A stretch of 64,000 bases of DNA from Trichoplax adhaerens. Taxonomy: Eukaryota; Animalia; Placozoa. The notes below the pieces were generated by a model. That model searched no databases and was not told the DNA's origin. It saw only the letters and a program-made list of their open reading frames with translations. Both the position numbers and the translations under genes were made by a program. Position 1 is the first letter of the stretch. Each line of letters begins with the position of its first letter. Location of the stretch: the NCBI RefSeq assembly GCF_000150275.1, contig NW_002060943.1, forward strand, positions 1,292,832-1,356,831, given 5' to 3'. Shown in pieces: positions 1 to 23,300 of this stretch.

Positions 1-3000
1 TTGTAGATGTATAAGAAGTCGACGAGCTTGGAGTTGTATATGTACTAGTCGATGAGTACGGACTAGAGCTGCTTGGAGTCGTGTATATTGAGCTCGATGT
101 CGAATATAGGCTTGTAGATGTATAAGAAGTCGACGAGCTTGGAGTTGTATATGTACTAGTCGACGAGTATGTGCTAGAGCTGCTTGGAGTCGTGTATGTT
201 GAGCTCGAAGTCGAATATAAGCTTGTAGATGTATAAGAAGTCGACGAGCTTGGAGTCGTATATGTACTAGTCGACGAGTACGTACTAGAGCTGCTTGGAG
301 TCGTGTATGTTGAGCTCGAAGTCGAATATAAGCTTGTAGATGTATAAGAAGTCGACGAGCTTGGAGTTGTATATGTACTAGTCGATGAGTACGGACTAGA
401 ACTGCTTGGAGTCGTGTATGTTGAGCTCGAAGTCGAATATAAGCTTGTAGATGTATAAGAAGTCGACGAGCTTGGAGTCGTATACGTACTAGTCGACGAG
501 TACGTACTAGAGGTGCTTGGAGTCGTATATGTTGAGCTCGAAGTCGAGTATAAGCTTGTAGATGTATAAGAAGCCGACGAGCTTGGAGTCGTATATGTAC
601 TAGTCGACGAGTACGTACTAGGGCTGCTTAGAGCCGTGTATGTCGAGCTTGAAGTCGAATATAAGCTTGTAGATGTATAAGAATTCGACGAGCTTGGAGT
701 CATATATGTACTAGTCGACGAGTACGTACTAAAGCTGCTTGGAGTCGCGTATATTGAGCTCGAAGTCGAATATAAGCTTGTAGATGCATAAGAAGTCGAG
801 AAGTACGTACTAGAACTGCTTAGAGTCGTGTATGTTGAGCTCGAAGTCGAATATAAGCTTGTAGATGTATAAGTCGACGAGCTTGGAGTTGTATATGTAC
901 TAGTGGATGAGTACGTACTAGAGCTGCTTGGAGTCGTGTATGTTGAGCTTGATGTCGAATATAAACTTGTAGATGTATAAGAAGTCGACGAGTACGTACT
1001 AGAACTGCTTGGAGTCGTGTATATTGAGCTCGATGTCGAATATAAGCTTGTAGATGTATAAGAAGTCGACGAGCTTGGAGTCGTATATGTACTAGTCGAC
1101 GAGTATGTACTAGAGCTGCTTGGAGTCGTGTATGTTGAGCTCGAAGTCGAATATAAGCTTGTAGATGTATAAGAAGTCGACGAGCTTGGAGTTGTATATG
1201 TACTAGTCGATGAGTACGGACTAGAGCTGCTTGGAGTCGTGTATATTGAGCTCGATGTCGAATATAGGCTTGTAGATGTATAAGAAGTCGACGAGCTTGG
1301 AGTTGTATATGTACTAGTCGACGAGTATGTGCTAGAGCTGCTTGGAGTCGTGTATGTTGAGCTCGAAGTCGAATATAAGCTTGTAGATGTATAAGAAGTC
1401 GACGAGCTTGGAGTCGTATATGTACTAGTCGACGAGTACGTACTAGAGCTGCTTGGAGTCGTGTATGTTGAGCTCGAAGTCGAATATAAGCTTGTAGATG
1501 TATAAGAAGTCGACGAGCTTGGAGTTGTATATGTACTAGTCGATGAGTACGGACTAGAACTGCTTGGAGTCGTGTATGTTGAGCTCGAAGTCGAATATAA
1601 GCTTGTAGATGTATAAGAAGTCGACGAGCTTGGAGTCGTATACGTACTAGTCGACGAGTACGTACTAGAGCTGCTTGAAGTCGTATATGTTGAGCTCGAA
1701 GTCGAATATAAGCTTGTAGATGTATAAGAAGTCGACGAGCTTGGAGTCGTATATGTACTAGTCGACGAGTACGTACTAGAGCTGCTTAGAGTCGTGTATG
1801 TCGAGCTTGATGTCGAATATAAGCTTGTAGATGTATAAGAAGTCGACGAGCTTGGAGTCGTATATTTACTAGTCGATGAGTACGTACTAGAGCTGCTTAG
1901 AGCCGTGTATGTTGAGCTTGATGTCGAATATAAGCTTGTAGATGTATAATAAGTCGACGAGGTAGGAGTCGTATATGTACTAGTCGACAAGTGTGTGCTA
2001 GAGCTGCTTGGAGTCGTGTATGTTGAGCTCGAAGTCGAATATAAGCTTGTAGATGTATAAGAAGTCGACGAGCTTGGAGTCGTATATGTACTAGTCGACG
2101 AGTATGTACTAGAGCTGCTTGGAGTCGTATATGTTGAGCTTGAAGTCGAATATAAGCTTGTAGATGTATAAGAAGTCGACGAGCTTGGAGTCGTATATGT
2201 ACTAGTCGATGAGTACGTACTAGAGCTGCTTGGAGTCGTGTATGTTGAGCTCGAAGTCGAATATAAGCTTGTAGATGTATAAGAAGTCGACGAGCTTGGA
2301 GTTGTATATGTACTAGTCGATGAGTATGTACTAGAACTGCTTGGAGTCGTGTATATTGAGCTCGAAGTCGAATATAAGCTTGTAGATGTATAAGAAGTCG
2401 ACAAGCTTGGAGTCGTATATGTACTAGTCGACGAGTACGTACTAGAACTGCTTGGAGTCGTGTATGTTGAGCTCGAAGTCGAATATAAGCTTGTAGATGT
2501 ATAAGAAGAAGTCGACGAGCTTGGAGTTGTATATGTACTAGTCGACGAGTACGTACTAGAGCTGCTTGGAGTCATGTATGTTGAGCTCGAAGTTGAGCTA
2601 GGAGTCGTATATGTACTAGAACTGCTTGGAGTCGTGTATGTTGAGCTCGAAGTCGAATATAAGCTTGTAGATGTATAAGAAGCCGACGAGCTTAGAGTTG
2701 TATATGTACTAGTTGACGAGTACGCATGAGAGCTGCTTGGAGTCGTGTATGTTGAGCTCGAAGTCGAATGTAAGCTTGCAGATGTATAAGAAGTCGACGA
2801 GCTTAGAGTTGTATATGTACTAGTCGACGAGTACGTACTAGAACTGCTTGGAGTCGTGTATGTTGAGCTCGAAGTCGAATATAAGCTTGTAGATGTATAA
2901 GAAGTCGAAGAGCTTGGAGTTGTATATGTACTAGTCGACGAGCTTGGAGTCGTATATGTACTAGTCGATGAGTACGTACTAGAACTGCTTGGAGTCGTGT

Positions 3001-5500
3001 ATGTAGAGCTCGATATCGAATATAAGCTTGTAGATGTATAAGAAGTAGACAAGCTTGGAGCCGTATATGTACTAGTCGACGAGTACGTACTAGAGCTGCT
3101 TAGAGTCGTGTATGTTGAGCTGGACGTCGAAAATAAGCTTGTAGATGTATAAGAAGTCGACGAGCTTGGAGTTGTATATGTACTAGTCGACAAGTACGTA
3201 CTAGAACTGCTTGGAGTCGTGTATGTTGAGCTTGATGTCGAATATAAGCTTGTAGATGTATAAGAAGTCGACGAGCTTGGAGTTGTATATGTACTAGTTG
3301 ATGAATATGCGCTAGAACTGCTTGGAGTCGTGTATGTTGAGCTTGATGTCGAATATAAGCTTGTAGATGTATAAGAAGTCGACGAGCTAGGAGTCGTATA
3401 TGTACTAGTCGATGAGTATGTGCTAGAACTGCTTGGAGTCGTGTATGTTGAGCTCGAAGTCGAATATAAACTTGTAGATGTATAAGAAGTCGACGAGCTA
3501 GGAGTCGTATATGTACTAGTCGACGAGTACGTACTAGAACTGCTTGGAGTCGTGTATGTTGAGCTCGATGTCGAATATAAGCTTGTAGATGTATAAGAAG
3601 TCGACAAGCTTGGAGTCGTATATGTACTAGTCGACGAGAATGTACTAGAGCTGCTTGGAGTCGTGTATGTTGAGCTTGATGTCGAATATAAGCTTGTAGA
3701 TGTATAAGAAGAAGTCGACGAGCTTAGAGTCATATATGTACTAGTCGACGAGTACGTACTAGAGCTGCTTGGAGTCGTGTATGTTGAGCTCGATGTCGAA
3801 TATAAGCTTGTAGATGTATAAGAAGGCGAAGAGTACGTACTAGAACTGCTTAGAGTCGTGTATGTCGAGCTCGATGTCAAATATAAGCTTGTAGATGTAT
3901 AAGAAGTCGACGAGCTTGGAGTTGTATATGTACTAGAACTGCTTGGAGTCGTGTATGTTGAGCTTAATGTCGAATATAAGCTTGTAGATGTATAAGAAGT
4001 CGACGAGCTAGGAGCCGTATATGTACTAGTCGACGAGTACGTACTAGAACTGCTTGGAGTCGTGTATGTTGAGCTCGAAGTCGAATATAAGCTTGTAGAT
4101 GTATAAGAAGTCGACGAGCTTGGAGTCGTATATGTACTAGTCGACGAGTGCGTACTAGAGCTGCTTGGAGTCGTGTATGTTGAGCTCGAAGTCGAATATA
4201 AGCTTGTAGATGTATAAGAAGTCGACGAGCTTGGAGTCGTATATGTACTAGTCGACAAGTGTGTACTAGAGCTGCTTGGAGTCGTGTATGTTGAGCTCGA
4301 TGTCGAATATAAGCTTGTAGATGTATAAGCAGAAGTCGACGAGCTTGGAGTCGTATATTTACTAGTCGACGAGTATGTACTAGAGCTGCTTGGAGTCGCG
4401 TGTGTTGAGATTGAAGTCGAATATAAGCTTGTAGATGTATAAGAAGTCGACGAGCTTGGAGTTGTATATGTACTAGTCGACGAGTGCGTACTAGAGCTGC
4501 TTGGAGTCGTGTATGTTGAGCTCGATGTCGAATATAAGCTTGTAGATGTATAAGAAGTCGACGAGCTTGGAGTTGTATATGTACTAGTCGATGAGTACGT
4601 GCTAGAACTGCTTGGAGTCGTGTATGTTGAGCTCGAAGTCGAATATAAGCTTGTAGATGTATAAGAAGTCGACGAGCTTGGAGTTGTATATGTACTAGTT
4701 GATGAGTAAGTACTAGAGCTGCTTGGAGTCGTGTATGTTGAGCTCGAAGTCGAATATAAGCTTGTAGATGTATAAGAAGTCGACGAGCTTGGAGTTGTAT
4801 ATGTACTAGTCGACGAGTACGTACTAGAGCTGCTTAGGGTCGTGTATGTTGAGCTTGATGTCGAATATAAGCTTGTAGATGTATAAGAAGTCGACGAGCT
4901 AGGAGCCGTATATGTACTAGTAGACGTGTACGTGCTAGAACTGCTTGGAGTCGTGTATGTTGAGCTCGAAGTCGAATATAAGCTTGTAGATGTATAAGAA
5001 GTCGACGAGCTTGGAGTTGTATATGTGCTAGTCGACGAGTACGTACTAGAGCTGCTTGGAGTCGTGTATGTTGAGCTCGAAGTCGAATATAAGCTTGTAG
5101 ATGTATAAGAAGAAGTCGACGAGCTTGGAGTCGTATATGTACTAGTCGATAAGTGTGTACTAGAACTGCTTGGAGTTGTGTATGTTGAGCTTGAAGTCGA
5201 ATATAAGCTTGTAGATGTATAAGAAGTCGACGAGCTTGGAGTTGTATATGTACTAAACGACGAGTAAGTACTAGAGCTGCTTGGAGTCGTGTATGTTGAG
5301 CTTGATGTCGAATATAAGCTTGTAGATGTATAAGAAGTCGACGAGCTTGGAGTTGTATATGTACTAGTCGACGAGTACGTACTAGAGCTGCTTGGAGTCG
5401 TGTATGTTGAGCTCGAAGTCGAATATAAGCTTGTAGATGTATATGTACTAGTCGATGAGTACGTACTAGAACTGCTTGGAGTCGTGTATGTTGAGCTTGG
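1..5500. repeat. Coding minisatellite, 111-bp unit, about 50 copies
   Basis: ttgtagatgtataagaagtcgacgag recurs at 1, 112, 223 and onward. Some units have 3-bp or 24-bp indels. Confidence 0.97.
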
Positions 5501-5686
5501 TGTTATAGACGTACTAGTTGGAGAAGTGTATGCGGAGCTTGTGGACGGATAAGAAGTCGACGGGCTTGATGTTGCATACATGCTAGTGCTGCTTAGAGTA
5601 GTGAAAGTTAATGATGATGGAGATGCTGTATACGAACTTGCCGAAGAATATACAGACGATGTTGTGATAGACATCACAGATGTGGA
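2..5686 (-). CDS. Large exon of a secreted mucin-like Ser/Thr/Tyr-rich tandem-repeat protein (open at the left window edge and bounded by an N-gap on the right)
   Basis: The minus-strand frame reads STSVMSITTSSVYSSASSYTASPSSLTFTTLSSTSMYATSSPSTSYPSTSSAYTS..., then repeats of LYSTSSSTYTTPSSSSTYSSTSTYTTPSSSTSYTSTS. The codon phase is the same at position 2 and position 5642. The indels inspected between units are multiples of 3, and no in-frame stop was seen in the units checked. The ORF track misses it because it has no stop in the window. Confidence 0.9.
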
Positions 5687-5687
5687 A

Positions 5688-5796
5688 NNNNNNNNNNNNN
5701 NNNNNNNNNNNNNNNNNNNNNNNNNNNNNNNNNNNNNNNNNNNNNNNNNNNNNNNNNNNNNNNNNNNNNNNNNNNNNNNNNNNNNNNNNNNNNNNN
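5688..5796. other. Assembly gap (N run)
   Basis: Run of n characters. The two ORF-track entries spanning it are artefacts. Confidence 0.99.
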
Positions 5797-7434
5797 GTCA
5801 CATACTAATACTAACTGTACTGTACTGTACTAAAATTGTCCTGCAACTCTAATATATTCTTAAATAAAACCATTTTAAACTGTTCTTTAAATGTAGATAC
5901 TTTTATAGCCTTCTTATGGAATCTACAAATATAGGTTGATATGTTTAGTTATTTACACCCCATACAGTCTTCGCCAGTTTTCTATAATTATTTGCTATTA
6001 CATAGCCTATTATGGTAGATGATGTATCTAATTTTGTATCCTAGTTCTTTCCATGTGCTGTGTCTCTAAGGCTATAAACACCAACGACTTCTGCCTCAGA
6101 TTTAGTTAGTTGCAACAGTTGTAGCGTTAGTATTTTTCACTATACTTCATGGCAGCTTACATGCTCCCCAACATTACAGTACTACCAGATCGTAGGTAAC
6201 CACAGTCTACAACATTGTACCTATTTTCTACTGAAATCTTTGAGTGATTCTCTGCATGGCAACTAAGTCTGCTACTGCTGTTGTATCGAGCTCTCCATCA
6301 CGCTACTTTCTATAAATTTGTGTCGATTGTAGATTTATTTTACAACAGGTACGATGGAATAATTCCATTGCATAAAATCCTTTATGTAGGCTCCAAGATA
6401 TGGTACCATATCGATTTTTGTAGAAAATAAATCGAATTTTAAAAATTTTCAAGTAACGTTTTTAACTTTAAACTGTATTTAATTAAGTGGTCTAGATGAT
6501 TACAGCAATTAAAAATCAAATCCTACAAAATATAGATAATTTTCTCGTAATTCGAATATATATTCCTGTAATGGCTACTTACAATTAGCACTAGTATTAC
6601 TATTAACATCGTAAAAATCTATATTCTACCTAGAAATTTTAGTATTATAGTACTGTATACATATAGCGAAACCAGTTCAACGATAAGCATGCACGCTTTA
6701 CCCATTCTACTTTACTATAGTTATTCAACTATTTTACATCGTTATACACGCTAAAACTTTATACGATGTTTTTCTCATGCTCACTGCAATCAAGACAACT
6801 TTTTACTTGGTTATTCTCTGTAATTTCTTACGATTGTAGCGGACAGATAATATCTTGAAACATCACAACGTGCAGTCCATTTAATAATTAAATGAAACAG
6901 CCTATAGCACACTATAAGATATGCAAAATGCATCTCAGTCAATATTTTCTCGATAAATCTATATCCTATATTCTTAATTGAAATCATTCTTAGTCATGGA
7001 TTATTTTAATGGAAAACATACCAAAGGTAATTTTATTTAACCCAGATGATGAAAGTAAACGGTTGTAGAAGTAGGTAATTATATGTAATATAATATGCTA
7101 TGAAATTCAAATAAGGCAAGGAGTATTTCATTAATTAATAAATCTATATCTTATATTTCTTAATTCAAATGATATTGACCTTGACCACTTCTGTTAGAGG
7201 GCTTATTTTGAAGCTAATCTTATTTAATACTGATGGCAAAGACTAACCATGGCGATAACGGAAATTATTAGATGCCGGCGTAAAACTTCAGATTAAGCTG
7301 ACCGCAAAGTTATGTATTCGTTCATTTTTTGAATACATAGATTATATAATTATCGTTCTATACCACGTTAAACAGTTTAAGTTTTGACTACTGTTGGTAA
7401 AAAATTATCTACATTAAAATTTTTTTGTGCTTAC

Positions 7435-7510
7435 CTGTCGTAGTTTGGCCATAGCTGATGATAGCAATGGCAAAAATGATTGCCAAGACGGAAGTTGAAT
7501 TTGCTGCCAT
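7435..7510 (-). CDS. Probable first (signal-peptide) exon of the Ser/Thr/Tyr repeat protein
   Basis: ATG at 7510 gives MAANSTSVLAIIFAIAIISYGQTTT, followed by a phase-1 donor G|GTAAG. It has a hydrophobic core and a plausible SYG-Q cleavage site. It is on the same strand and directly upstream of the repeat exon; linkage across the gap is inferred. Confidence 0.75.
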
Positions 7511-10500
7511 TCCGCTGTTGTAATTTACGCTTTTTCTTTATCGTATTTACCAATCACGGAGTTTTTATGTGATATTTCTTCATCGATTTCATCTAATGCA
7601 AACCTAAAAAATATTTTACCGTTTTACTAGTGAGACTGTGCGTAATTCGCTTTTAATACTTAAAAGCTATTAATATATATATATATATGAATTAGTGTGA
7701 TAAGAATCAACGTGGTCAGGATCGAAAGGAACGCTACAGGGAACAATTGACAATAATGAGATTAGTTCGTATTCAAAACAAGTTACTTTCGGTAACATAC
7801 ACGTGTACTTACTGGTAGTATATCTTGACAATTGCTGTCTAATTTTCAGTCTTCTAGCGGCACTATTTTACCAAAGTAAGATAAAGAATATGTGTGAATA
7901 ATTTTATAATCAATTAGAGCTTACTTGCCTCTTCCCCATTTTACGCATACGGGTATAATATCAACTATACTAAAAGTGAATAATAGCAGCGTTATTTATA
8001 ACTTGGTAATAACAGATAGATGTTTATTGACTGTTAAATTTTAGGACATAAAATTAAAATTTGGAAATCGAAGAAATAATATGATTTGAAAAAAGTGCGT
8101 TATTCATCCCGTTAATTATCATTAACGGACTTTGTTGCAGTATCTGCCTGAAATATATTATGAATATAATGTACTAATCGTGATGTAAAAGACTACAGAA
8201 TAACAGTCAATCACTATTATTCCTTATACATTTTCGTCTTAATTTATTTACTCAACATGAATTGATAGGGGAGTTTTGCATCTCTAGCCGTTAAATGAAA
8301 TGAATAAGACTGAAAAGTATAAATGCTTAATTATTATCATTAGCATGGTGAACAATCAATGTTACATACAATGGGGAACAATAATGCTAGAATTCTGCTA
8401 GTATATGATATTTTTGGCTAATATATCACTTAATAAGGTTACTGTACTAGATAATTACAATTTGAAAATTTTAATTTTGTACATTAAATCACCATGTCTA
8501 CGCTACGTTGACCCCTACTGCAGGGTCCGTCAATGCATTAGCCAACTCCATCTGATCAATAGTTTGTATATAGGGCGTTCCCATAGTATTTTATAAAATA
8601 AATTTATCGCTTTATATAATTTCTTTCGATGATAAATTTAATTTATATTAAAATATATGGCTGTCTAATAACCACTTTAACTTAGGTTACACGACTATAA
8701 CAGGAATAGATGTAATACTTCAGCTCAATCTATGAAGCTACAGAAAATTTATTTGGCTCCGCCAGTCAAGTCTTGATAGTTAGTAATACAAACAATACAT
8801 TATACTCATAGATAATATTGAAACATGTAATTTTCCAGTTATTGTTATTTTAATGGGTATGCATTAAATTTATTCACAAATGTAACCAAGCACTGTCCGT
8901 AGAATCTTAAGATGTATAATAATTAAACTATTTAGATCGAATGGATAGACCGCATTCAATTTAGACGAAAATGGACGTATTTAATTACATACTCATATTT
9001 TCAGATTTATCTACTTATATCTGATAATTTCGTCAAATCTACTTGAAAAAAGTCCATTAACCAGATGTAAATTTAAATCTTTAATTTTTACAGCCACTAT
9101 GTGCATTTTATTTAATCGTATGATCCTTATAATGAGATAACATAGCATAGGCTAATCAATGGAAGACAGAAAATCAGAGCCTTACGCATTTGAAATTTTG
9201 CTTTAGTTTCGATTTATTTACTACTGCTGTAATTGAAGTATAAAATTTTTTAAAATTAGGAGCGTATTAATATTGAAGATGTTCTCTTATGTTGAGTGTG
9301 TCGTTATAGTCAAAGATGCAATAATACATTGTTAATTTCTAATGTGTATTATTGAAAATTTCGTCTAAGCTTAGTGTGAATACAGAATGCTAATATTAAT
9401 TGTAGAAAATATAGTGTTCACTATCAGGCCTTACCAGTACAAAATCATCCATTTACGGACCAAAGACGTTAAGATTGTCAACATATACGCTTTGTAATGA
9501 CTATTTATTACTGCAACATTGTGTCGGGATAGCAAATTAGCAAGGGCTGCAAGGGCTGAAGAACTTAATGTAATATTGTAGCGACTGAGAAGCAAAATAA
9601 AATTGAGGATTAACAATTGTCCCCGTCTATATAGTATTTTAAGCCGATAAGCTATTCCCCTTTACTAAATAAACAGTTTGCTGACTATAAATCAACTTTA
9701 TACACTATTGAATCATTAATCAGAACTAAAGCCTCCTAACTAAAATACGGTAACGTAGAATTCTATGCCAGATTAAATTTGACTTGCCATATACAGTCAA
9801 TAAATCAATTGGTATTAAGACCTCTCTGAAGGCTTGGTAGCTAGCTAGTTTTATAGCAACTTAGAAAATGATGTTAGTATCAAAATGCATACTTGTTAAT
9901 TAAATTTAACTTGCAGAATGTATGTAATAATAGTATGCTGAGCATGTGTCTGCCTACGTGACCTAGAGACTAATTGAATCAAAGATCAAATTTGGGTGTG
10001 TCGTCAACGTTTTATGTATTAGAGTAAAAGATAAGCGTGGAAAGCTACATCATATTTAATTATCCAATTCTTTACATCATCCTTTCCACATCTGCATTTA
10101 CCTATTTTCGTTTGCCAAAGTTTTGTCTTAGAAATGATCGCTGGCATGGTTGATGATTGAGTATCTGCTATTATGATAGCAAGGTTTAAAGTTCAATCAC
10201 CTTCAATTTAATAAAGTTCAATTATAAAAGAAGTTCTACCTCTAAAATTAAAGTTAAACTTGAGCAAATTGAGTAGTGCTCTATAGAAAGAAAGGCATCG
10301 CCAACCATTTTGTAGCGGTTGCCATGGAGAATCTAGGGGGGCATTTCCGCCCCTATTATCTCTAGCTCGGCTATTAACTATATCGATCAATATTATATTC
10401 TCTATACTGTTACTGTTTTTAAGCAAGTTTAATTTGTTTTAGTGCTAGCAGCAGCTGAAGCAGTGCCTCTTGCCAAGAAGAAGACATCATCGTTCTAATA

Positions 10501-10860: not shown

Positions 10861-12534
10861 ATGGCTACTGATTCAATTAATTTACGCCAGCCGTCATCTG
10901 CTACCGAACAAGATAACGATTCCGATTTTAATGATCGAACAAAACTGTTATCTGATAGTCAAGAGATAAACTCAGCGAATGGATCTACCCATCACGAAGG
11001 TGGAAAAAGTAATCGACGATTAACTGTGGATGACATTGCGGAATCACTCAATTGTGGCTTATTCCAGTATTTATGCAATTTTGTCTGTGGATTATGCTTC
11101 ATCGCTGAAGGTCTAATTATCCAATCGATCAGTATTATTGCCATGTCCGCCTGTGATTTAAATATCAACCCCCATAACCGAACATGGCTTAGCATGTCCT
11201 TGCTTATTGGTATCGTTGTCAGTTGTGCATTTTGGGGCCGATTAGGCGATTCCTTTGGTAGGAGGAGAGTGTTGCTATTAGCATTATTTATTAATATTAC
11301 ATTTACGCTTCTGTCAGCATTTTCTTATAATTATCAAATGTTAATTATCATGGCCTTCTTTAACGGATTTGGAACAGGAGGAGTGTTACCTGTAGCCTTA
11401 GCTTATGTTATTGAATTCTTTCCTCGAAAGTATCGAGGTATGGCTGGATTTTCAGCTAATGCATACTGGAGTTTTGGTAATATTTATGCCGCGGTAATGG
11501 CACTTTTAATTATAACTAGATCGATTGCAATTCCTATTGGTAATATTGTTTTGACCGGTTGGCGTATTTTCACAATAGTTTGCGCTATACCTCCGTTGAT
11601 AGCATTAATCAGCTTAGCATTTATGCCGAATAGTCCTCGATTTCTAATTAAGCAAGGCAAACGAGAGAAAACATTAAGTGTAATAAATAGAATACATCGC
11701 ATTAATAGTTACTGTAGCAATAAGCATAGAAATCAATCGTTGCGTATCAAATTAGCAGATTTGCCTACTATGAGTGATATACTAAATGATATTGATAAGG
11801 ATGAAGGTAAAGCTAGCTGTTCATGCTGGTCTCGAATAGTACAATTTATGCGACAATATGCAATCCTTTATTCTTTAAAGTGGCGTAAAAGGACATTATT
11901 AATGACCGCTGTATGGTTTTTATTTTGCCTTTGCACTTACGGATTTTGGCTTTGGTTACCAACCTATTTCTCACTCTATGCTCATGGTCATGGACACAAA
12001 TGTCTCCGCCCTGTTATTTTGAATCGTACACGTTATCACATGAATGTGTTAAATCAATCATTATCATGTATAGAAAACACCCGCAATACAGCTATTTATC
12101 GTAATTTATTTCTAACAACGCTATCAACACTCCTTGCCGAACTTATTTTTATACCTATTATTAATATATCTGGAAGAAAACTATTATTTAGTGGATTAGC
12201 TCTGGCAACGGGTGTAATTATGTTAAGCATTTGGTTAACCAATACATCAACAGGTGTACTCGTATTTTCATGTTTGTTCACTGGTATATCCGGTGCTGCG
12301 TGGCCAGTATTAAATGTATGGACTTCTGAATTGTATCCAACACAACTTCGTTCCACGTCCAATGGCTATCTTAATTTATGGGCTCGAATTGGTGCTATAA
12401 TAGGAACTACCACATTTGGTTTATTATTACAAGTTAGCTGTAAATTACCAATTATTATTGTTGGCATTATATGTTTACTAAGCGCAATTCTTGCTATATT
12501 TTTGCCAGATACGAGTAAAGTAGATATTGACTAG
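10861..12534 (+). CDS. Intronless MFS transporter, SV2/SVOP-like (557 aa)
   Basis: About 12 hydrophobic segments. Motif A GRLGDSFGRRR, EFFPRKYRG, MPNSPRFL and SELYPTQLRS are present. ACDLNI and a Cys/N-glycosylated loop after WLPTYF resemble the SV2 family. Confidence 0.92.
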   Translation: MATDSINLRQPSSATEQDNDSDFNDRTKLLSDSQEINSANGSTHHEGGKSNRRLTVDDIAESLNCGLFQYLCNFVCGLCFIAEGLIIQSISIIAMSACDLNINPHNRTWLSMSLLIGIVVSCAFWGRLGDSFGRRRVLLLALFINITFTLLSAFSYNYQMLIIMAFFNGFGTGGVLPVALAYVIEFFPRKYRGMAGFSANAYWSFGNIYAAVMALLIITRSIAIPIGNIVLTGWRIFTIVCAIPPLIALISLAFMPNSPRFLIKQGKREKTLSVINRIHRINSYCSNKHRNQSLRIKLADLPTMSDILNDIDKDEGKASCSCWSRIVQFMRQYAILYSLKWRKRTLLMTAVWFLFCLCTYGFWLWLPTYFSLYAHGHGHKCLRPVILNRTRYHMNVLNQSLSCIENTRNTAIYRNLFLTTLSTLLAELIFIPIINISGRKLLFSGLALATGVIMLSIWLTNTSTGVLVFSCLFTGISGAAWPVLNVWTSELYPTQLRSTSNGYLNLWARIGAIIGTTTFGLLLQVSCKLPIIIVGIICLLSAILAIFLPDTSKVDID

Positions 12535-14556
12535 ATGATATCAATTTAATATTACTGAAATATTTAAAAGTATTTGTGATTAGTATTGCTAGACTGGATT
12601 TATGTGTTATCAGACTGGAGTAGTGGATTCTGTCATTCTAAGTTTGTTCGTAAATTTGGTCACGTATTTCATAGTCATAGTTTGAGATGATGAACTACAG
12701 TCAACTTTGCAAATGAATAATGAAAAAATTAATGATAATATAGGATCTATTTAACGATAAGAAACTGTAGTAAAGGTGCTATAACAAGGCATTAAAGCAC
12801 AATTTAGGAATTCATTTAAAACATCGCGAACATAACAAATAGTTCGTTAAAATCGAAGAGATCTAAGTGGTTTCAAGATTACAGTTTCATATCCTTTACT
12901 GATAGCTTTATTTAAGCAATAGAATAGATGGCATTCCTTGAAGACGCTATAGGTTTTTAAGAGCAGAATGAAAACATAATGATTATAAGTTCAGTGTTTT
13001 TATCGTCGATTATAGGATAGAATAACGAATCAGATCGCATATTATATTTTATTGTTTTGCTGAAGTCGATTGTAGTGTATAACGAGATGTAATTTACTTT
13101 TTTGGATGATTCATTTAACCGGCGGAACCAGTACCAGCAGCTGATATACAGGATTACTTGCAATGTTGTGGGATGTAATGATTTTACATAATGTATGATA
13201 TAATAAAGTTTGACGGTATATTTTTGATATACTATGACATTATTTTTACCAACAGCGTATATTTACTGCAAATGGGTGCGTCATGGATGGACAGATGCTT
13301 TAATTTTTTATCTTTATGATACGTTACAGTATAATGAAAAATGAATAACTTGAAAACTAGTAAATAAATTTAAAATTTGGTTTAATCTAAGGTTACTTGA
13401 TCGTCTATACTTCAAAATATTTGACGTGCATATTGAAGTACAATTCAAATTTATGGCTCGATTCACGAGCATACCGCCATACTTCCATCGACTGTTCAAT
13501 TTTACTAACTGTATAAGAACTACTGCCCTTTGTAGTAGATCTATCACTAATTATAGCATGCACCAAAACTATGCTGCAAAACGCACGTAGCGCTAACTTT
13601 ATGTCTCACTCATTACTGCAATTAAATTAAACTCTAAAAAAGTTTCAACATGTCCTAATATTACGGATTTGCGAGTATAACAGCTCATTGAATTTTATTT
13701 TGCATAGCCAATTTTCAGTTGCTAAGAAATACTTTTATTGCGACATTTCCTACAATTTTACTCCTAACACGACAGTCATGTCATACAATGACGATACTTA
13801 AGGCGCATTTACTACATTACTAGACTCTATCTCGGCTTATTAAGACAAGACAGTAAATTGAAGTAGATGTCTGTTGCTATATGCACAAAACAATACACTG
13901 AAAGGATACTTGTATAAATTGTTTTAAATAATAGAATATAGGATTATGGACGGTGTATCTATAAAATACGCTATTCTCAATGGAATAAAGGGAGTAGGAA
14001 TAAAAGTTTTTAAGCCTGAAAATCTTATCATATTTTCGCGTGTTCACATGCGTTCTTAGTCTGTAGCAGTGAGGAACATGAAGTATTAAGTAGTGAGTAG
14101 GCTACAGTTTCTGCTCTATTTTATGTTGTAAATTTGTGAATTAGTCGGTGGATCACCAAATCATTAGTACTTTTTCCGCATAGGCTAGTAGTCGTCCCGA
14201 TCTTTGCATTGCTATTACGTTCTTTCTGATGTAACGAATAGGTAAATGACTTCTATAGCTATCATAGATAATCTAAGCTGTCTCTAAACAATTCATATAA
14301 TCAGCTCTACCTTTATGATATTAATCCCTAAACTACGGGCAAGGCGCTTTAGGTTGCTCCATCAATCAATTAATAGACAGTTTACCGCTCTAACTAATTC
14401 CCTAGGGTAAATAGCCGCCATAATTATTAAATCCGGGTCTGTCTACCCTAATCGGAATGCTTTTAATAATTGTAACACTATCAGACTTTAATTATCGCAT
14501 TTGTTCAAGAGATTCTATTATATATGAAATTCTTTACAGTAATATTTGCAATTGCA

Positions 14557-15853
14557 GGTCAATTGGTGATATTTTGGATAGAAAGAGAACGCTATCAATG
14601 TGTTTATCTATTAATGTACTTTTTACTATTCTGTCAGCGTTTTCTTATAATTATCAAATGTTAATTTTCATGGCCTTCTTTAACGGATTTGGAACAGGAG
14701 GAGTATTACCTGTAGCATCAGCTTATGTTATTGAATTCTTTCCTCGAAAGTATCGAGGTATGGCTGGATTTTCAGCTAATGAATATTGGGGTTTTGTAAT
14801 ATTTATGCCACGTTAACGGTGTTTTTTAATTAAAACCAAATCAATAGCAAATCCCTTTGGTAATATTGCTTTGACTGGTTGGCGTATTTTCACAATAGTT
14901 TGCGCTATGCCTCCGTTGATAGCATTAATCAGCTTAGCATTTATGCCGAATAGTCCTCGATTTCTAATTAAGCAAGGCAAATGAGAGAAAACATTAAGTG
15001 TAATAAATAGAATACATCGCATTAATAGCTACTGTTACAATAAGCATAGAAATCAATCATTGCGCATTAAACTAATAGATTTACCCACCGTAGATGATAT
15101 GCTAAATGATGTAGATGAAAATGAAGATAACGTTAAAGCTAGCTATTCATATTCTCAAATACAGCAATTTATGCGACGGTATGCAATCCTTTATCCATTA
15201 AAGTACAGTAAACGGACATTATTAATTACGACCTGGTTTTTATTCTGCTTTAGCATCTATGGGCTTTGGGTATGGTTACCAACCTATTTCTCGTCCTATA
15301 CTCATAGACAGAAATGTTCTCTCTCATCTCGTTTAAATCATACTAGCCATTATATAAGCACTTCACCACTAAATCAATTACTACCCTGTATAGAAAACGT
15401 CCGCAACACAGGCATGTACTGTAACGTATTACTAACAGCGCTATCGGCACTCCTTGTCGAAGCTATCTTCATACCTATTATTAGTATAGAAAAAAAACTA
15501 CTATTTAGTGTATTAGCTCTAGTAATTAGTATAAGTATGTTTTGTATTTGGTTAACCAATACATCAACAGTTATACTCGTATTTTCATGTTTATTTAGTG
15601 GTACATCTGGTGCTGCTTGGAATATAAGAAATGTTTGGACTTTTGAGTTATACTCTACATAATTATGATCAACCTTCAAAGGTTACAATCGTTTATGGGG
15701 TCAAATTAGTGGTATATTAGGAAACTACAATATTTAGTTTACTTCTACAAGTTGGCTGTAAGTTACCAGTTCCTATTGCTGGTATTTCATGTTTAATAGT
15801 AGCTATTTTTAGCTCTATCTCTGCCAGATACTACTACGGCAGATATCGATTAG
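14557..15853 (+). pseudogene. 5'-truncated, disabled paralogue of the 10861-12534 MFS gene
   Basis: Collinear with the intact copy from the GRLGD region to the C-terminus. There is a 1-bp deletion near 14795, CGA>TGA at about 14982, stops near 15660-15668 and further frameshifts. Confidence 0.88.
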
Positions 15854-17318: not shown

Positions 17319-20300
17319 CTAGAATATCCCCTATAGATGTAAACAGATTACACATTTAGTACTTGATCATTTTTTATTGATATTAGCTGATTACCTTATC
17401 CTTATAATAAAACTACATAGATATTGTCTGTTACCTCCTGTTGTCCATGTTGATTTTCGAAGGCTACTGGAGTCTCTGCTATAGTAAAATAGTTAATAAC
17501 GAATTTTAATAAAAAGATAATATCTTTATAACTTTTAATATCACCATACCAGCGATAGCAGCCGACTACGTGAAAATTGCATAGAGCACAGTTTAGTTGC
17601 TAATATTGCTATCTACCTTTAGCTCGGGGAAGCAAATTCTGTTCTGGCGTTACACTTCTTAAGCTGTCGTTGTGATACGAAAATTAAAGTGAGTCAGGAT
17701 AGGATTCAAATATAGTCTACATAAAATTACAACAACAATTTTTTGATTTTATTTCTTACGTCTTCTTTTGGTTATGTTTGTACACAAAAACTGCTATCGC
17801 TACAATGACTAATACACCAACAACAGATCCCACAGCTATTCCAACGATTGTTCCCACTAAAATACAGATGAAAAACGTTAATACCAGCAATTAGATGATA
17901 ATCTATCGCAATATCATGCGTTAATATAGAATAATTATTTGTACGTGGTAACTGTTTAGACCAACATATTAAACTCACCACTAGTAGGCAAATTTTGACA
18001 GCGATTTCCCGAGACACCTTGCGTACAACTGCAGTTAAATAATACGTATTCAATTACAATACTTAATGTTCCATCCGTTACCAAAATATTCAAATTTTCC
18101 ATTGAAATATCTTAGCTTTTACTGATAGGGCTATAGTGTACTTACTTGCATTGTGCAGCACCATTAGAAGCGTAGCATGTACCTCCATTATTACAGGTAT
18201 TAGCGAAACAGACAACTGAAAAACGGGGAAAAAATGTTAATCATAACAGTGTAAACTTACATCAACATATCTAAGGTTATGCATAGATGGATAAATTACA
18301 TAAACAAATAGATAGATATCTTAAGAAAGATATATAGTATTTGTGAGTAATATTTATAATTATTTATGTACAGATATATAAGGGTTATACTATCCTAAGT
18401 TAGATTGCAATTTGAGAAAACATTGGTATATTATAGTTTGTAAAATTTCTGCTGACTTACGGGTGCAAGTTTTTCCATCACCCGCAGAGTGACTGTTACA
18501 AGCGCAGGTATAGGATCCATTGGTATTCGTGCATGTAGCGTTAACATGGCATGGCTTAACAGCAGCACTACATTCATTTAAATCTTAAAATAGAAAGCCA
18601 ATAAAAAAGACATACACAGTTATAAGACAGGTTTTCAATATAGACCTTATAAGTGCAAGAGAAAAGTTGCGAATTCTATTCTAACATTGAAAAAATTACT
18701 AAAATTCAGATTTATGTTTCCTTGACAGATGTTATTATTTAATCATAGATGAGAATTATCAAGGATTGATTTCTTTATCGTAAATCAAATGATTGTAACT
18801 AATATAAATATTTCTTACCAATGCATAGCTTAGAGGCGATATTAAATGTAAATCCCGCTCGGCAACTGCAATTATAGGAACCGACGGTGTTGGTACACTG
18901 CTGGCCTCCAGTACAATTGTTATACTGAGAGCTGGAGCACTCATTGAAATCTATTTGGATAATTAGAATCGAAATCGATGCAACAATTTTAGCACATATT
19001 AAAGTATATGATCACGATTGAATACAAAGATCGTTACCTGATACAGCAGAAGATTGTACATAATGATCACCGATTGGATTAGTGTCCAAAATAGACTTTA
19101 ACGTTGGTGTACCAAAGGTGTAATTTTGAAGCAATGTCAAGACAAAATCAATGATGATACTTCCTTGTCTATAAAGTAGTTATAATCAATAAATGAATAT
19201 TCTACTATCGGTAATTTTTAAGTTATTTAGGAATTAAATTTCGTATTATCAGTAGTTACTAAATCATTTTAAAGAATAGATAGAATACTACAGGGAATGT
19301 GAATGGGGCAAAGAAAGTGATAATTTTATGTATACATCTCAAGCCGACTAATGTCGCAAGAATGACGAAATAGTTTAGAAAATTTTTCCACTAACTCATG
19401 GCGATGAAAGGACATCTTAATATGTACCGATGAGCTAATACCATATACCGTCGCTGTATAGTTAGAGAAAAACATTAAATAAATAAATAAATTGATTTTT
19501 ACCTTAAATTAGTAATAGTTACAGCTTTGACAGTATTGCTGGTTCGAGTATCCCGTTGATATTGAAGTAATATCTAGGGTACATCAAAATAAATTCTTAT
19601 GTTCTGTAGATCATTCTTATAATCTTTAGTAGCTAAAAGGTATTAATCGTTAATAATCTAAGCTATAATTAACTCACATCATTTTGAAATTGTATTACTG
19701 CGCTCTTATAGGCAGTGCTAGTTTTATCATTGTATTGAGGATTAAATGTGCCATTTACGGTAGCAGTTACTTGGTAAGCATCGGCTCCTAATAATTATAA
19801 TCAAAAGGAAAGCGTTTATTAGGGAGAAAGCAGTAATTTCTAATTATTAGCAGGCGAATCCTGTTGTATAGATTATTATATATTAGCAGATAAATCAATG
19901 TTGTACAGATTATTATATTATACTCACGCTGGCAAGTTATGCCATCTTTGAGAGACTGGCTCAGGACTAATTGTTGATTTGGCGAATAAAGACCAGGTTT
20001 GCATTGGCAGTAATAACTTCCGTCATTGTTAATACAATCGGCAAGTTGGCCGCATGGCGTCCCGGTGCTGCATTCATTAATATCTATCATAAAGGATATC
20101 AAATACGTTCTAAATATATCCTGTCTACTTTAATAGAAAATTCTTAAACGAATGTATAGATTTGAATTTGTAGTTAGCAATCTAATAGATTTAACTAACC
20201 AGTACAAGTCTTGCCATTGCCCGTGTATCCAGCTTTGCATTGGCAGGTATAAGAACCGACAGTATTTTGACACGTTGCTTTAGCATGGCATGTACCAGGA

Positions 20301-23300
20301 ATATTGCATTCATTAATTTCTAGTCACAGATAATTTGAAATGTTACAGTAATAAGTTAACGGAATAGAAACTATGTCATTCTCAACCAGAATTGATTCAG
20401 TAATATCTGTCAAAAACCTGTGCAATTTCTGCTATTAGGATGGAGTTTGTAGCCTGCTGAACATTGACAATGAAATCCACCAATGGTATTATTACATATC
20501 ATTTGGCATAAATTATTGTTGGCTGTACATTCGTTAATATCTGTCCAAAATAAAATATTGAACACAATTTAATACTGCTTCAAATTTGTTTATTAATGAT
20601 CTGTTGATAAGTGAAATGTGAAGAAATCGTATAGATTAGCAGTGTTATTTCGAAGTCAACAATACGCAACTCATAGAAATTGTGGAAGCTAAGTAAACTA
20701 TCTTAATAAGTTATAGGTATTATCGATGTTTTGAAAATTTCTGAATTTTCCCTAACCTGCACAACTTTTTCCATCACTTTGTAAAGCGTATCCCTTCCTG
20801 CAAGCACAATAATCAGTTCCATTGCGCTGAACACAAATATGGCTACATGAGTTGGTTCCATTGCATGGAATAGTAACTACGTTGCCAATAAGGTCGATAT
20901 AAAAGAACGAATTTACATTTAGTGTGATATACCTTACGCGTACAGTGCTAAAAAATTGTTCAATAAATCATTTCTGTTTCATTTGATCTAAGATTATGCA
21001 AATTTATAGCACTATATAGAGAATTACTACGATCAAACTATTCATTCTAGGCGTTTTACCCTGTATTACTTATATCGTAGACCATAAATATGGTCATCAA
21101 AATTTTAATAGCTTCAATTTGTATGATTCAAAATTTCTAGTTAGAATAATAAGTAAACGATTACTTGTTATGTATATAGGCTAAATGGTATGATCTGGAT
21201 CTAAAAGACAAACTAATTTTTCGTTGTGATGACCTAGATAGTACTATATTCTAGCTATAATTAATTAGCCATCGTAAATTTTAATTATTTTAATTTTTTT
21301 ATCATACCATTGCAAGTTGAGTTGTCACTACTGAGAGTAAATCCGGGATCGCATGAACACTCGAAAGAACCAGGTAAATTTTGACAATTTTGCGAGCAAG
21401 TTTTTGGATTGAAACATTCATCAATATCTAGATGCAGTCAAAAATATCATATCAGCCTGGAAGGCTTAGCCATAGAAGGAATGACATCAAGGAATAAAAA
21501 TGCAATATCGCATTATCTTAAAAATAAAATTATTTGCAACTACCATCGCAAGCTTTTCCATTGGCGTTTAATCTATATCCGGGCTGGCAATCACAAATAT
21601 AGCTGCGGAAGGTATTGATACAAATTTGTTGGCAAGTATGAGTGGTAGAATTAGCACATTCGTCTATGTCAGTACAAATTCGACCATCTCCTGTAAGACC
21701 CGATGGGCAGCTACCGCATGTAAAGCCAGAAAGTGGCGCCTTATGATCGGTACAAGTAACATTTTCAAAGCATGGAGCTACAGAACAGCTATCGAAATCA
21801 ATGGTACAATGATCACCAGTCCAACCCTCTAGACACCTACATGGAACTTGCGATGCAAAGCCATCATCAACGAATTCAGCGCTAAAAGAAAGGTACAGTA
21901 ATCAACATTTAAATTTATCATTATGCAACCATTGAGCTCTATCCAATTTTAGTGTAGTCCATATCCCATTGCATAAAATCAATAAAGTATTGATATCGGT
22001 TACAAATTTCAATGTTATAGCAAATAGTTACGCTACCTGTAATCACATTGGCCTCCATTAGCACAGTGGCACATAATAACTTGTGCTGGTTGATAAATAC
22101 TAACAGCATCATTAGAATCCTTAGCTACAACTTGGATGCTAAAATTAGTATACTGGGTTACTGTCCATTGAAACTCATTTATTGCTTGATTAAGTGTCGC
22201 ATTATTTGGTAATTTAAGGGCATCAATTATAGTAGTGTCATCAGGATTTCGATCAGTAACGTTAAATATGAATTTTAACGTTTGGCCGAAAGTGACATTG
22301 AGAACAGCTGGTCCAACAATATCGGGTGGGAAATTTTCTATGGAAGCAAACATACAAGAGGTTAGAATAGGATTAAAATTATTATCAGATAAGTTAGTAG
22401 TTTGATACAGTAGAGAAAAGCTGGAAAGAAAATTGATAATCATATTATTGCATGATATCGTCGATAAGTCAATATCAATATTCATCTCATTTCCCACTTT
22501 TGCTCTTTACCTGCTTGTTTTTCAGCTGAATTGAAACTATCGACATTTTCTTTAGCTTGTACAGCCAGTTTGATATCTAACGTTTGACTAGCATCATATA
22601 AACAAGAAAGATCATTGCCACATGCTTGTTGAGCTTGTTGTAGTAATGCAGTGTTATCACCAAACAGTGCAGTAATATTGTCGCTAAAAACAGGCACAAA
22701 TGTTAAGTCAGTAAAATTTGCATGTGTAGTCCCAGGTGGATAGGTAAATAGGGATTGAGATTGACTAATTTGCCCTACAATAGATGGTCAAGAATAAGAA
22801 TATTAGCAGTCCATTGTCAACGATTGTATTAATAAAACTTTCTAGTTTGAAATAATGCTCTGCATGCCTCTATTCGATTTCAAGATTTAAAACATAACAG
22901 GAAATAATATGAGCAACTCATCAACATACATGCTTGTCCAAATTGGTAAAAGATTTGCGATTCTGTTGAATTAATCTCTACTACTGTATCATCAGGACGT
23001 GTAAAATCATCTTCCATATTACCATTCCATACACCCAACAATCCACGCGTTTGACCTCGATAAACTGTTGGAATGTTGACTGCGATATTAATCATACCAA
23101 CTAATGGTGTAACTTCTAAACTAACACCAGAGGAAAAGGCAACAATTAAGCTGCCATTCCTTGATAATGAAAGATCGACATTGTTGTATTCACGTGATAC
23201 GTTAACGCTTAAATTAGTCATGGCTAATGACATAGTACTATTAACAAGGATTGTAAAATTATTCGTTTCAAGGTCAAGTGTGCCTTGGATAATATCGGAG

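What the first reader, a model, noticed from the sequence alone, without database searches (positions are those of the whole stretch)
2..7510. Giant secreted Ser/Thr mucin-like protein with regularly spaced tyrosines
Seen: at least about 1,890 codons of a 37-aa repeat made almost entirely of S and T, with 5 Tyr, 2 Pro and 1 Leu per unit. Tyr spacing is 7-9-6-9-6, the consensus has no Cys or charged residues, and a signal exon lies upstream. Known: classical PTS mucin domains are Pro-richer and nearly free of aromatics. Periodic Tyr in polar low-complexity chains drives dityrosine or DOPA cross-linking and sticker-spacer coacervation in other proteins. Inference: this could be an undescribed adhesive or gel-forming mucus component that combines an O-glycan brush with Tyr stickers.
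Basis: partly seen in the sequence, partly recalled or inferred. Interest (0 to 1): 0.8.

Follow-up and report, generated by a model that had tools for sequence, protein, structure and literature searches.

The report
Tyrosine-studded mucin exon, MUC4-like gene
The repeat is real and under coding constraint: it is the giant mucin exon of a MUC4-type surface glycoprotein gene of the placozoan Trichoplax. Its charge-free Ser/Thr chain carries a tyrosine every 6-9 residues, which is very unusual for a mucin, but what the tyrosines do is untested.

Summary
Observation confirmed. The minus strand 5686..2 is one open frame of 1,895 codons. About 51 copies of a 37-residue unit follow an 85-residue unique start. 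Composition: S 45%, T 31%, Y 13%, P 5%, L 4%; two Lys and no other charged residue or Cys. Tyr spacing is 7-9-6-9-6.

Unit differences show purifying selection in this frame (pN/pS 0.17-0.45).

The N gap at 5688-5796 hides only the intron-1 acceptor and about one exon base. Two paralogues show the same phase-1 splice from a conserved signal exon.

This is not a stand-alone or gel-forming mucin. It is exon 2 of a MUC4-type gene. Beyond a 6.6-kb N run come the exon-2 end, then NIDO, He_PIG and Ca-EGF exons. Paralogues also show a VWD with GDPH, C8-3_MUC4 and a transmembrane exon.

The genome fits Trichoplax adhaerens. DOPA chemistry is unlikely because no tyrosinase was found. Peroxidase-made dityrosine links or non-covalent Tyr stickers remain open.

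The scan had already flagged the same polymer on the tandem paralogue 32.6 kb away (s1-735869). A third, diverged copy keeps 12% Tyr. I found no expression data. Array length (1,895 to about 4,130 codons) and the C-terminus of this copy are hidden in N runs.

The parts
7435..7510 (-). Exon 1: start codon plus 25 codons and 1 nt. It encodes a hydrophobic signal-peptide-like leader and ends at a phase-1 donor G|GTAAGC.
   Evidence: Sequence read. The homologous exon has the same donor and phase in paralogue B and paralogue D. It is 76/76 identical in allelic contig C694, while the flanks differ. No SignalP-type tool was available, so the signal function is inferred from the hydrophobic core and its position.
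5797..7434 (-). Visible part of intron 1. It includes a dispersed repeat at about 5,820-6,300.
   Evidence: The array frame is closed by TGA at 5800-5798. More than 40 genomic places match window ~5,820-6,300 at 67-77% identity.
5688..5796 (.). Assembly gap (109 N). It hides the 3' end of intron 1, the acceptor and about 1 nt of exon 2.
   Evidence: locates the N run. Paralogue acceptors and the exon-2 N-terminal alignment place the exon start at the gap's lower edge.
5432..5687 (-). Start of exon 2: an 85-residue non-repeated S/T-rich N-terminal stretch.
   Evidence: It is 67% identical to the same stretch of paralogue B from residue 1.
2..5431 (-). Tandem array of the 37-aa (111-nt) S/T/Y/P/L unit, about 51 units. 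The frame stays open to the window edge and continues into a 6,600-N run.
   Evidence: unit, composition, third-position bias, pN/pS. One search shows the N run directly before window base 1.

Best explanation
Window 2-7510 (minus strand) holds the first two exons of a MUC4-type surface glycoprotein gene ('gene A') of a placozoan, most likely Trichoplax adhaerens.

Gene structure:
- Exon 1 encodes a signal peptide.
- Exon 2 is a giant exon of at least 1,895 and at most about 4,130 codons. It encodes an uncharged Ser/Thr chain that gave no confident fold, with a Tyr every 6-9 residues.
- Beyond a 6.6-kb N run the gene continues with the exon-2 end, which is phase-compatible with the next exon. 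NIDO exons follow, then a 2.3-kb N run that in the paralogues holds the Cys-rich linker, VWD with GDPH and C8-3_MUC4. After that come a He_PIG-like Ig exon, Ca-binding EGF exons and a SEA-like exon.
- By homology, a transmembrane anchor closes the protein.

Inferred mechanism. The Ser/Thr chain is densely O-glycosylated in the Golgi and forms a long stiff brush at the far end of the protein. As in MUC4, autocleavage at GDPH could leave the mucin-NIDO part attached to, or shed from, the membrane-bound EGF part. It would then feed the glycocalyx or the mucus layer.

The tyrosines are kept by selection. Their role is most likely cohesive or adhesive, either as non-covalent aromatic stickers between glycan clusters or as peroxidase-made dityrosine links. 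It is not DOPA chemistry.

Shown: the reading frame, the coding constraint, the gene architecture, the paralogue family and the unusual composition. Inferred: glycosylation, cleavage, membrane anchoring of this copy, expression, and any role of Tyr.
For: Frame and unit.

Coding constraint: 105 of 160 unit differences are at codon position 3. pN/pS is 0.17 (all differences) or 0.45 (unique variants), and 0.24 outside CpG. In NCG codons synonymous G>A occurs 51 times against 7 for non-synonymous C>T. No stop was created, although 6% of possible changes would create one.

Splice logic:
- Exon 1 has a phase-1 donor.
- The same split codon at the acceptor is seen in B and D.
- A and B exon-2 starts align from residue 1.
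- The exon-2 end ...CCA C|GTAAGT is joined in phase to ag|CA AGT AGA TTA TAT of the next exon.

Domains:
- On A's own exons: NIDO E=1e-7, He_PIG 7e-6, EGF_CA 1e-11.
- On B: NIDO 3e-14, VWD 8e-15, C8-3_MUC4 2e-7.
- On C: NIDO, VWD 1e-19, C8-3_MUC4 7e-9.
- GDPH is present in B and C, and C has a TM exon.

Relatives. 262 proteins match the NIDO/linker exon. The best named ones are 'Mucin-like protein, partial [Trichoplax sp. H2]'. The full-length relatives read here end in EGF, a TM segment and a tail; Pfam found a SEA domain in the one scanned at that region, P0005.

Tyr is conserved beyond the young array:
- Paralogue D's degenerate 586-aa exon still has 11.8% Tyr, spaced mostly 6-9 apart.
- In A only 7 of 195 Tyr positions vary, all to His or Phe.

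Disorder: AF2 mean pLDDT is 37.

MUC4 alpha/beta model with GDPH cleavage: PMC8660890.

Organism: 105.63 Mb matches the 105.6 Mb listed for T. adhaerens (PMC4773876).
Against: - No transcript or protein evidence could be obtained. Three word-index protein searches returned nothing.
- Three N runs (109, 6,600 and 2,305 N) interrupt gene A. Array length, the frame across the gaps, and the AMOP/VWD and TM parts of this copy are therefore not seen.
- The 1,115-bp piece carrying A's exon-2 end and NIDO exon is 99.7% identical to paralogue B. It could be a misplaced B-derived or allelic contig.
- The Pfam AMOP model matched nothing here.
- Paralogue B has a frameshift inside its array, so members of this subfamily may be decaying.
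- Large in-frame indels follow from the triplet-phased sub-repeats and are weak evidence of selection.
- Some of the many synonymous changes are copies spread by unit duplication.
Confidence: 0.72

Rival explanations
1. Stand-alone secreted repeat protein. The array ends in a stop inside the unseen 6.6 kb, or is spliced or terminated before the NIDO exons. The product would be signal peptide plus Ser/Thr/Tyr polymer only, secreted as an adhesive or gel component.
For: The 3' end of the array is not visible. An orphan 1,066-bp array piece lies between gaps elsewhere in the scaffold, so the assembly of this region is unreliable.
Against: On the far side of the N run the array frame resumes, with a non-repeated exon-2 tail and a phase-compatible donor to the NIDO exon. 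Paralogue D shows signal exon, Tyr-rich exon and NIDO exon uninterrupted on one contig. Order and orientation in A match B and D.
Confidence: 0.12
2. Dying or silent gene copy. The array is a recently expanded coding minisatellite in a redundant tandem duplicate. It is open only because it is young, and it makes no product of consequence.
For: Units are 93-94% alike, so the array is young. Paralogue B carries a frameshift. Earlier notes report a stop in B's linker exon (s1-735894, not checked here). There are at least 19 MUC4-scaffold loci in the genome, so redundancy is high. No expression evidence was found.
Against: Strong third-position and synonymous bias, and the CpG control of 51 against 7. 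No stop in 5.7 kb, although the other five frames are broken. Exon 1 is identical in the allelic contig while its flanks differ. The Tyr-rich character persists in the diverged paralogue D.
Confidence: 0.08
3. Phosphoprotein rather than glycoprotein. This would be a Ser-rich chain with occasional Tyr that is heavily phosphorylated in the secretory pathway and works by Ca/Mg bridging, like the polyphosphoserine cement protein Pc-3 of sandcastle worms.
For: The chain is 45% Ser. Pc-3 is a Ser-dominated, phosphorylated marine adhesive (PMC4275877). That it also carries occasional Tyr is my own recollection, not checked here. Mucus secretion and gliding in Trichoplax depend on calcium (PMC6737977).
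Against: The chain has 31% Thr and Pro next to S/T runs on a MUC4 scaffold, which is the usual setting for O-GalNAc glycans. It has no acidic residues, which my own knowledge says secretory-pathway kinases of the Fam20C type usually need nearby. Trichoplax mucus binds WGA lectin (PMC6737977).
Confidence: 0.05

Closest known systems
Vertebrate MUC4 (and the SUSD2-type NIDO-AMOP-VWD proteins)
   Same: N-terminal signal peptide and a huge tandem-repeat Ser/Thr domain encoded by one giant exon. These are followed by NIDO, a Cys-rich linker, a VWD carrying GDPH, the MUC4-specific C8-3 module, EGF-like domains and (in paralogues) a single TM segment. The alpha (mucin) and beta (membrane) subunit logic follows PMC8660890.
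   Different: The repeat has 13% Tyr at fixed spacing and no charged residues; the MUC4 repeat is 16 aa (my own knowledge, not checked here). This protein has an extra He_PIG-like Ig exon and many Ca-binding EGFs plus a SEA-like module. The Pfam AMOP model does not score. The VWD, C8-3 and TM parts of this particular copy are hidden in N runs.
Placozoan 'Mucin-like protein, partial' (Trichoplax sp. [quoted passage not shown]
   Same: Same NIDO-linker-VWD-He_PIG-EGF-SEA-TM scaffold, 42-52% identical over the NIDO/linker exon. Same phylum.
   Different: Those proteins carry EGF or SRCR modules at the N-terminus and no Tyr-rich Ser/Thr polymer. Only 3-4 loci of this genome carry the polymer.
Gel-forming mucins (VWD-C8-TIL x3, PTS, cystine knot), reported for Trichoplax mucocytes
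   Same: Signal peptide and a long Ser/Thr-rich domain that is presumably O-glycosylated. Possible contribution to mucus.
   Different: There is only one VWD. No TIL, classical C8 or C-terminal cystine knot was seen in the visible exons. Hence there is no evidence for disulfide-linked polymer formation.
Tyr-bearing marine adhesive polymers (mussel foot proteins, sandcastle-worm Pc-1/2/3)
   Same: Highly repetitive, low-diversity sequence with regularly placed Tyr in a substrate-adhering marine animal (PMC4275877).
   Different: Those proteins are strongly basic or, when phosphorylated, acidic, and they rely on tyrosinase-made DOPA. This chain is charge-free, and the genome lacks type-3 copper proteins (PMC3658974). 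There is no sequence homology.

Membership tests
MUC4-type membrane mucin | N-terminal signal peptide | tested here: met
   Exon 1 (7510-7435) encodes a 25-residue leader with a 12-residue hydrophobic core. It is conserved in paralogues B and D and in the allelic contig. This was judged by eye; no signal-peptide predictor was available.
MUC4-type membrane mucin | Very large Ser/Thr-rich tandem-repeat domain in one exon, N-terminal to the globular modules | tested here: met
   1,895 open codons, 76% S+T, 111-nt period. The exon-2 tail and the phase-matched NIDO exon lie beyond the N run.
MUC4-type membrane mucin | NIDO domain | tested here: met
   Pfam PF06119 scores E=1e-7 on gene A's own exon L003:2382-2825. 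It also scores on B (3e-14) and C (2e-11, 6e-13).
MUC4-type membrane mucin | AMOP domain | tested here: inconclusive
   PF03782 gave no match in the six-frame genome search or on exons. It was also not reported for full-length relatives P0005, P0017 and P0019, so the test has little power here. In gene A this region lies in the 2,305-N run.
MUC4-type membrane mucin | VWD domain with GDPH autocleavage motif, and C8-3_MUC4 module | tested here: inconclusive
   Both are met in paralogues B and C: VWD 8e-15 and 1e-19, C8-3_MUC4 2e-7 and 7e-9, and GDPH present. In gene A these exons fall in the 2,305-N run and are not visible.
MUC4-type membrane mucin | EGF-like domains and a single C-terminal TM anchor | tested here: inconclusive
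   EGF_CA exons of gene A are found (E 1e-11 and 9e-9). A TM exon is found only in paralogue C at about window 17,890 and in relatives. A's 3' end lies in an 8,393-N run.
Gel-forming mucin | Repeated VWD-C8-TIL assemblies and C-terminal cystine knot | tested here: not met
   Pfam scans of all visible exons of A, B and C show one VWD and no TIL, C8 (other than C8-3_MUC4) or CTCK.
Classical PTS mucin domain | Pro/Thr/Ser-rich and nearly free of aromatic residues | tested here: not met
   Tyr is 12.9% here, against 0-2.5% in the S/T-rich regions of 18 homologous-scaffold proteins. Pro at 5.2% is within their range of 0-16%.
DOPA-based adhesive proteins | Tyrosinase (type-3 copper enzyme) available to convert Tyr to DOPA | tested here: not met
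   PF00264 gave no match in the genome (a weak test on a split-gene genome). A published survey found no type-3 copper proteins in T. adhaerens (PMC3658974).
Dityrosine-cross-linked extracellular matrices | Secreted haem peroxidase acting on exposed Tyr; dityrosine in the material | not testable with these tools
   Two full-length animal haem peroxidase matches exist (E about 1e-195). Their N-termini, and so their secretion, were not resolved. Dityrosine itself needs chemistry.

The most novel reading that the evidence does not exclude
The Tyr-punctuated, charge-free mucin of this small placozoan subfamily is a purpose-built cohesive or adhesive polymer. O-glycan clusters of 5-8 residues alternate with bare Tyr. 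The Tyr either stack as stickers or are joined by a secreted haem peroxidase into dityrosine. Cross-linking of this kind would turn a shed MUC4-type alpha subunit into the sticky trail or tough glycocalyx that lets Trichoplax adhere and glide. It would be a way of making a mucus network without the disulfide machinery of gel-forming mucins and without DOPA.
Probability: 0.15. Interest if true: 0.75.

Novelty: new variant of a known kind. Interest (0 to 1): 0.45.

Why it matters
Placozoans are among the simplest animals. They move by ciliary gliding on a sticky, calcium-dependent mucus trail whose molecules are largely unknown. Only a gel-forming mucin and a mucin-4-like protein have been named so far.

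A MUC4-type gene whose mucin domain is charge-free and holds 13% regularly spaced Tyr is a concrete candidate for a cohesive or adhesive surface polymer, and it can be tested directly. It also shows that the MUC4 scaffold with a giant repeat exon exists outside bilaterians, where it has expanded to at least 19 loci in this genome. That bears on the origin of membrane mucins.

If the tyrosines prove to be only tolerated, the finding is an ordinary, if oddly composed, lineage-specific mucin.

Tried and rejected
1. Word-index protein searches found nothing at the thresholds used. Queries were the exon-2 start (150 aa), the whole 1,895-aa frame and gene A's NIDO exon. For the two low-complexity queries HMMER's composition correction probably removes the score. 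The length window also excludes long gene models. These blanks say nothing about novelty or expression.

2. ESM Atlas look-alikes of five units gave a best score of 0.79, to unrelated bacterial low-complexity clusters. No lead.

3. A metagenome scan with a degenerate pattern for a 13-residue stretch of the unit (Y-T-T-P-S-S-S-S-T-Y-S-S-T) gave one hit. It proved to be an unrelated 46% GC contig, a chance match.

4. The encoding contig of the 77%-identical fragment P0001 is an 849-bp ENA metagenome contig, too short to show whether a Tyr-rich array lies upstream.

5. The Pfam AMOP model never scored, not even on relatives. AMOP is left as inconclusive rather than absent.

6. AF2 on five units gave pLDDT 37. 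There is no confident fold, so the idea of a regular beta-solenoid was not supported, though a single-sequence model is weak evidence.

7. Tyrosine sulfation was considered and set aside. From my own knowledge, it normally needs acidic neighbours, and there are none.

8. Haplotype or assembly duplication as the origin of gene A versus B was rejected for the gene as a whole. Intron 1 is only about 71% alike, and the signal, He_PIG and EGF exons differ. It is still possible for the 1,115-bp piece that is 99.7% identical.

9. Exons were searched one by one, by reference.

10. The contig is not human.

Full report
WHAT IS THERE

The window is G000:C1414:1,292,832-1,356,831 of a 105.63-Mb, about 32% GC, intron-bearing genome.

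On the minus strand, window 5686..2 is one open frame of 1,895 codons. After 85 non-repeated residues it consists of about 51 tandem units of mostly 37 aa (111 nt; TRF 93-94% matches, with 333- and 444-nt higher-order periods). The consensus unit is SLYSTSSSTYTTPSSSSTYSSTSTYTTPSSSTSYTST. Tyr sits at positions 3, 10, 19, 25 and 34, giving spacing 7-9-6-9-6, with 2 Pro and 1 Leu.

Composition is S 851, T 580, Y 244, P 99, L 70. There are two Lys and no Asp, Glu, Arg or Cys.

IS IT CODING?

An open frame in a young tandem array is not proof of coding, so I tested the pattern of unit differences.

- Among 39 canonical units there are 160 differences from consensus. Of these, 105 are at codon position 3, 107 are synonymous and 53 non-synonymous.
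- With 28.7 synonymous and 82.3 non-synonymous sites, pN/pS is 0.17. It is 0.45 if each variant is counted once, and 0.24 outside CpG.
- As an internal control for CpG decay, I compared the two changes possible in the nine NCG codons. The synonymous G>A occurs 51 times; the equally mutable but non-synonymous C>T occurs 7 times.
- No difference creates a stop, though 20 of 333 possible single changes would.
- The other five frames are broken. One same-strand frame is open in the consensus but interrupted every 200-320 codons in the real sequence.
- All unit-length variants (27, 31, 36, 38, 47 and 58 aa) are in frame. I give this little weight, because unequal exchange between triplet-phased sub-repeats produces it automatically.
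- Tyr positions vary in 7 of 195 cases, only to His or Phe.

THE GAP AND THE GENE MODEL

Exon 1 (7510-7435) is ATG plus 25 codons plus one base, followed by GTAAGC. The array frame is closed by TGA at 5800-5798, directly upstream of the 109-N gap. The frame therefore does not run through the gap, and the acceptor must be inside it.

Two paralogues settle where it lies.

- Gene B lies on the same scaffold; its signal exon is near contig 1,263,600. It has a homologous signal exon with the same donor and phase. Its acceptor reads ...tctag|CT TCC ACA.
- Gene D, on contig C1354, has the same signal exon, phase and split codon.
- Gene A's first visible bases after the gap are T TCC ACA. The A and B exon-2 N-termini align from residue 1 at 67% identity.

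So the gap hides the end of intron 1, the acceptor and about one exon base. An allelic contig (C694) has an identical exon 1, while three bases differ in the 50 nt before it.

The array runs off window base 1 into a run of 6,600 N. I take this to be an assembly gap, but I cannot exclude withheld sequence. On its far side is a 1,115-bp visible piece. There the same frame ends with a non-repeated S/T tail and the donor ...CCA C|GTAAGT (phase 1). The next exon starts ag|CA AGT AGA TTA TAT, in phase, and begins the NIDO domain.

Pfam on gene A's own exons gives NIDO (1e-7), He_PIG (7e-6) and EGF_CA (1e-11 and 9e-9). A SEA-like exon follows (compare the SEA domain in relative P0005). Between the NIDO and He_PIG exons lies a 2,305-N run.

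In gene B the stretch that corresponds to A's 2,305-N run holds the second NIDO exon with the Cys-rich linker, a VWD exon (8e-15) with GDPH, and C8-3_MUC4 (2e-7). Gene A's 3' end lies in an 8,393-N run.

Each exon was searched by reference.

THE FAMILY

Gene C lies in the window itself (about 17,700-26,529, minus strand). It has the same scaffold:

- NIDO, and VWD at 1e-19 with GDPH
- C8-3_MUC4, He_PIG and EGFs
- a TM exon at about 17,890

Its PTS exon (26,529-26,230), however, is short, non-repeated and Tyr-free.

The genome has at least 19 C8-3_MUC4 loci. The Tyr-rich polymer occurs only at A, at B, at an orphan 1,066-bp array piece between gaps, and at D. D's exon 2 (586 aa) is degenerate, with some Glu, Asp and Asn, and is 68% identical to B over its second half. 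It still holds 11.8% Tyr, spaced mostly 6-9 residues apart. This argues that Tyr is retained by selection and is not merely copied along with a young unit.

A full HMMER search with B's NIDO/linker exon found 262 relatives. The best named ones are 'Mucin-like protein, partial [Trichoplax sp. H2]'. The full-length relatives read here end in EGF, TM and a cytoplasmic tail; Pfam found a SEA domain in the one scanned at that region, P0005. In the S/T-rich regions of 18 such relatives Tyr is 0-2.5% and charged residues are 0.7-24%. Here the values are 12.9% and 0.1%.

ORGANISM

The nearest named proteins are from Trichoplax sp. H2. An earlier follow-up in this scan reached the same conclusion (s1-741774). 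I take the genome to be T. adhaerens with about 0.9 confidence.

HOW IT MOST LIKELY WORKS

By architecture this is a MUC4-type protein. MUC4 is made as one chain and is putatively autocleaved at GDPH in the VWD. That yields a mucin-NIDO-AMOP alpha subunit and a membrane-bound EGF beta subunit (PMC8660890).

I infer the same here. A long O-glycosylated brush, with no confident fold (AF2 pLDDT 37), would be carried at the tip of a membrane-anchored EGF stalk and could be shed.

Trichoplax leaves a WGA-binding, calcium-dependent mucus trail needed for gliding (PMC6737977). A mucin-4-like protein is expressed in dorsal epithelial cells (10.1101/2024.09.18.613768). That protein has SRCR modules, like relative P0004, and is a different family member.

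The role of the tyrosines is unknown.

- DOPA chemistry is unlikely. I found no tyrosinase, and none has been reported for this species (PMC3658974).
- Two animal haem peroxidases exist, so dityrosine links are possible. Whether those enzymes are secreted was not resolved.
- Non-covalent sticker behaviour is equally possible.

WHAT REMAINS UNCERTAIN

- No expression evidence was obtained (searches were blank for technical reasons).
- Array length lies between 1,895 and about 4,130 codons.
- The 1,115-bp exon-2-tail/NIDO piece is 99.7% identical to gene B, whereas intron 1 is about 71% alike. This means either gene conversion or a misplaced contig.
- Gene B has a frameshift in its array.

VERDICT

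It is a new variant of a known kind.

The scan had already noted the same polymer on paralogue B (s1-735869).

Noticed in passing
window 17,700-26,529 (minus): A third tandem MUC4-type gene (C). It has a short Tyr-free PTS exon (26,529-26,230), NIDO exons (25,439-25,014; 24,766-24,218), a Cys-rich linker (24,166-23,912), VWD with GDPH (23,584-22,883), C8-3_MUC4, He_PIG, many EGF exons and a TM exon at about 17,890.
   Followed up: partly
window 10,861-12,534 (+) and 14,457-15,662 (+); L005:4632-6317 (+): MFS/sugar-transporter-type genes sit head-to-head upstream of the mucin genes. A 561-aa paralogue lies in the same position relative to gene B, so the duplicated unit was mucin gene plus transporter gene.
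   Followed up: partly
window ~5,820-6,300 (intron 1): Dispersed repeat. More than 40 places on many contigs match at 67-77% identity. It is probably a transposable-element fragment.
   Followed up: no
G000:C1414:1,285,117-1,286,231 versus 1,256,549-1,257,663: Mosaic similarity between genes A and B. Identity is 1,112/1,115 nt over the exon-2 tail, intron and NIDO exon, about 71% in intron 1, and about 96% (aa) in the He_PIG exon. This points to gene conversion or a misplaced contig.
   Followed up: partly
G000:C1414:1,269,609-1,270,674: An orphan 1,066-bp piece of the same array lies between a 50-N and an 8,393-N run, just 3' of the transporter gene. It is open in the S/T/Y frame and at best 97.5% identical to window 969-2029. 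It probably belongs in one of the array gaps.
   Followed up: partly
L009 (G000:C1354:26,000-33,522), + strand: Fourth family member (D) on a small unplaced contig. It has a signal exon at about 3,660-3,740, a degenerate Tyr-rich exon at 5,071-6,797 (586-aa frame, Y 11.8%, some E/D/N), then the NIDO exon. The contig ends there.
   Followed up: partly
L002 (G000:C694, 2,188 bp): Allelic or duplicate contig of window 6,728-8,288 at about 99% identity. It carries a 624-bp segment absent from the window upstream of exon 1. Exon 1 itself is identical.
   Followed up: partly
G000:C1379:42,568-86,718 and other contigs: At least 19 loci with the MUC4-specific C8-3 module, four of them in tandem on C1379. 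This is a marked expansion of the MUC4 scaffold in this genome.
   Followed up: no
L008 (ENA ERZ27264358, k141_480264): An environmental metagenome contig encodes a NIDO/linker exon 77% identical to gene B's. It may come from another placozoan lineage.
   Followed up: no
window 38,222-38,947 (-), 47,872-48,738 (-): Ordinary neighbours: an epoxide hydrolase exon (EHN plus alpha/beta hydrolase) and DcpS scavenger decapping enzyme exons.
   Followed up: no
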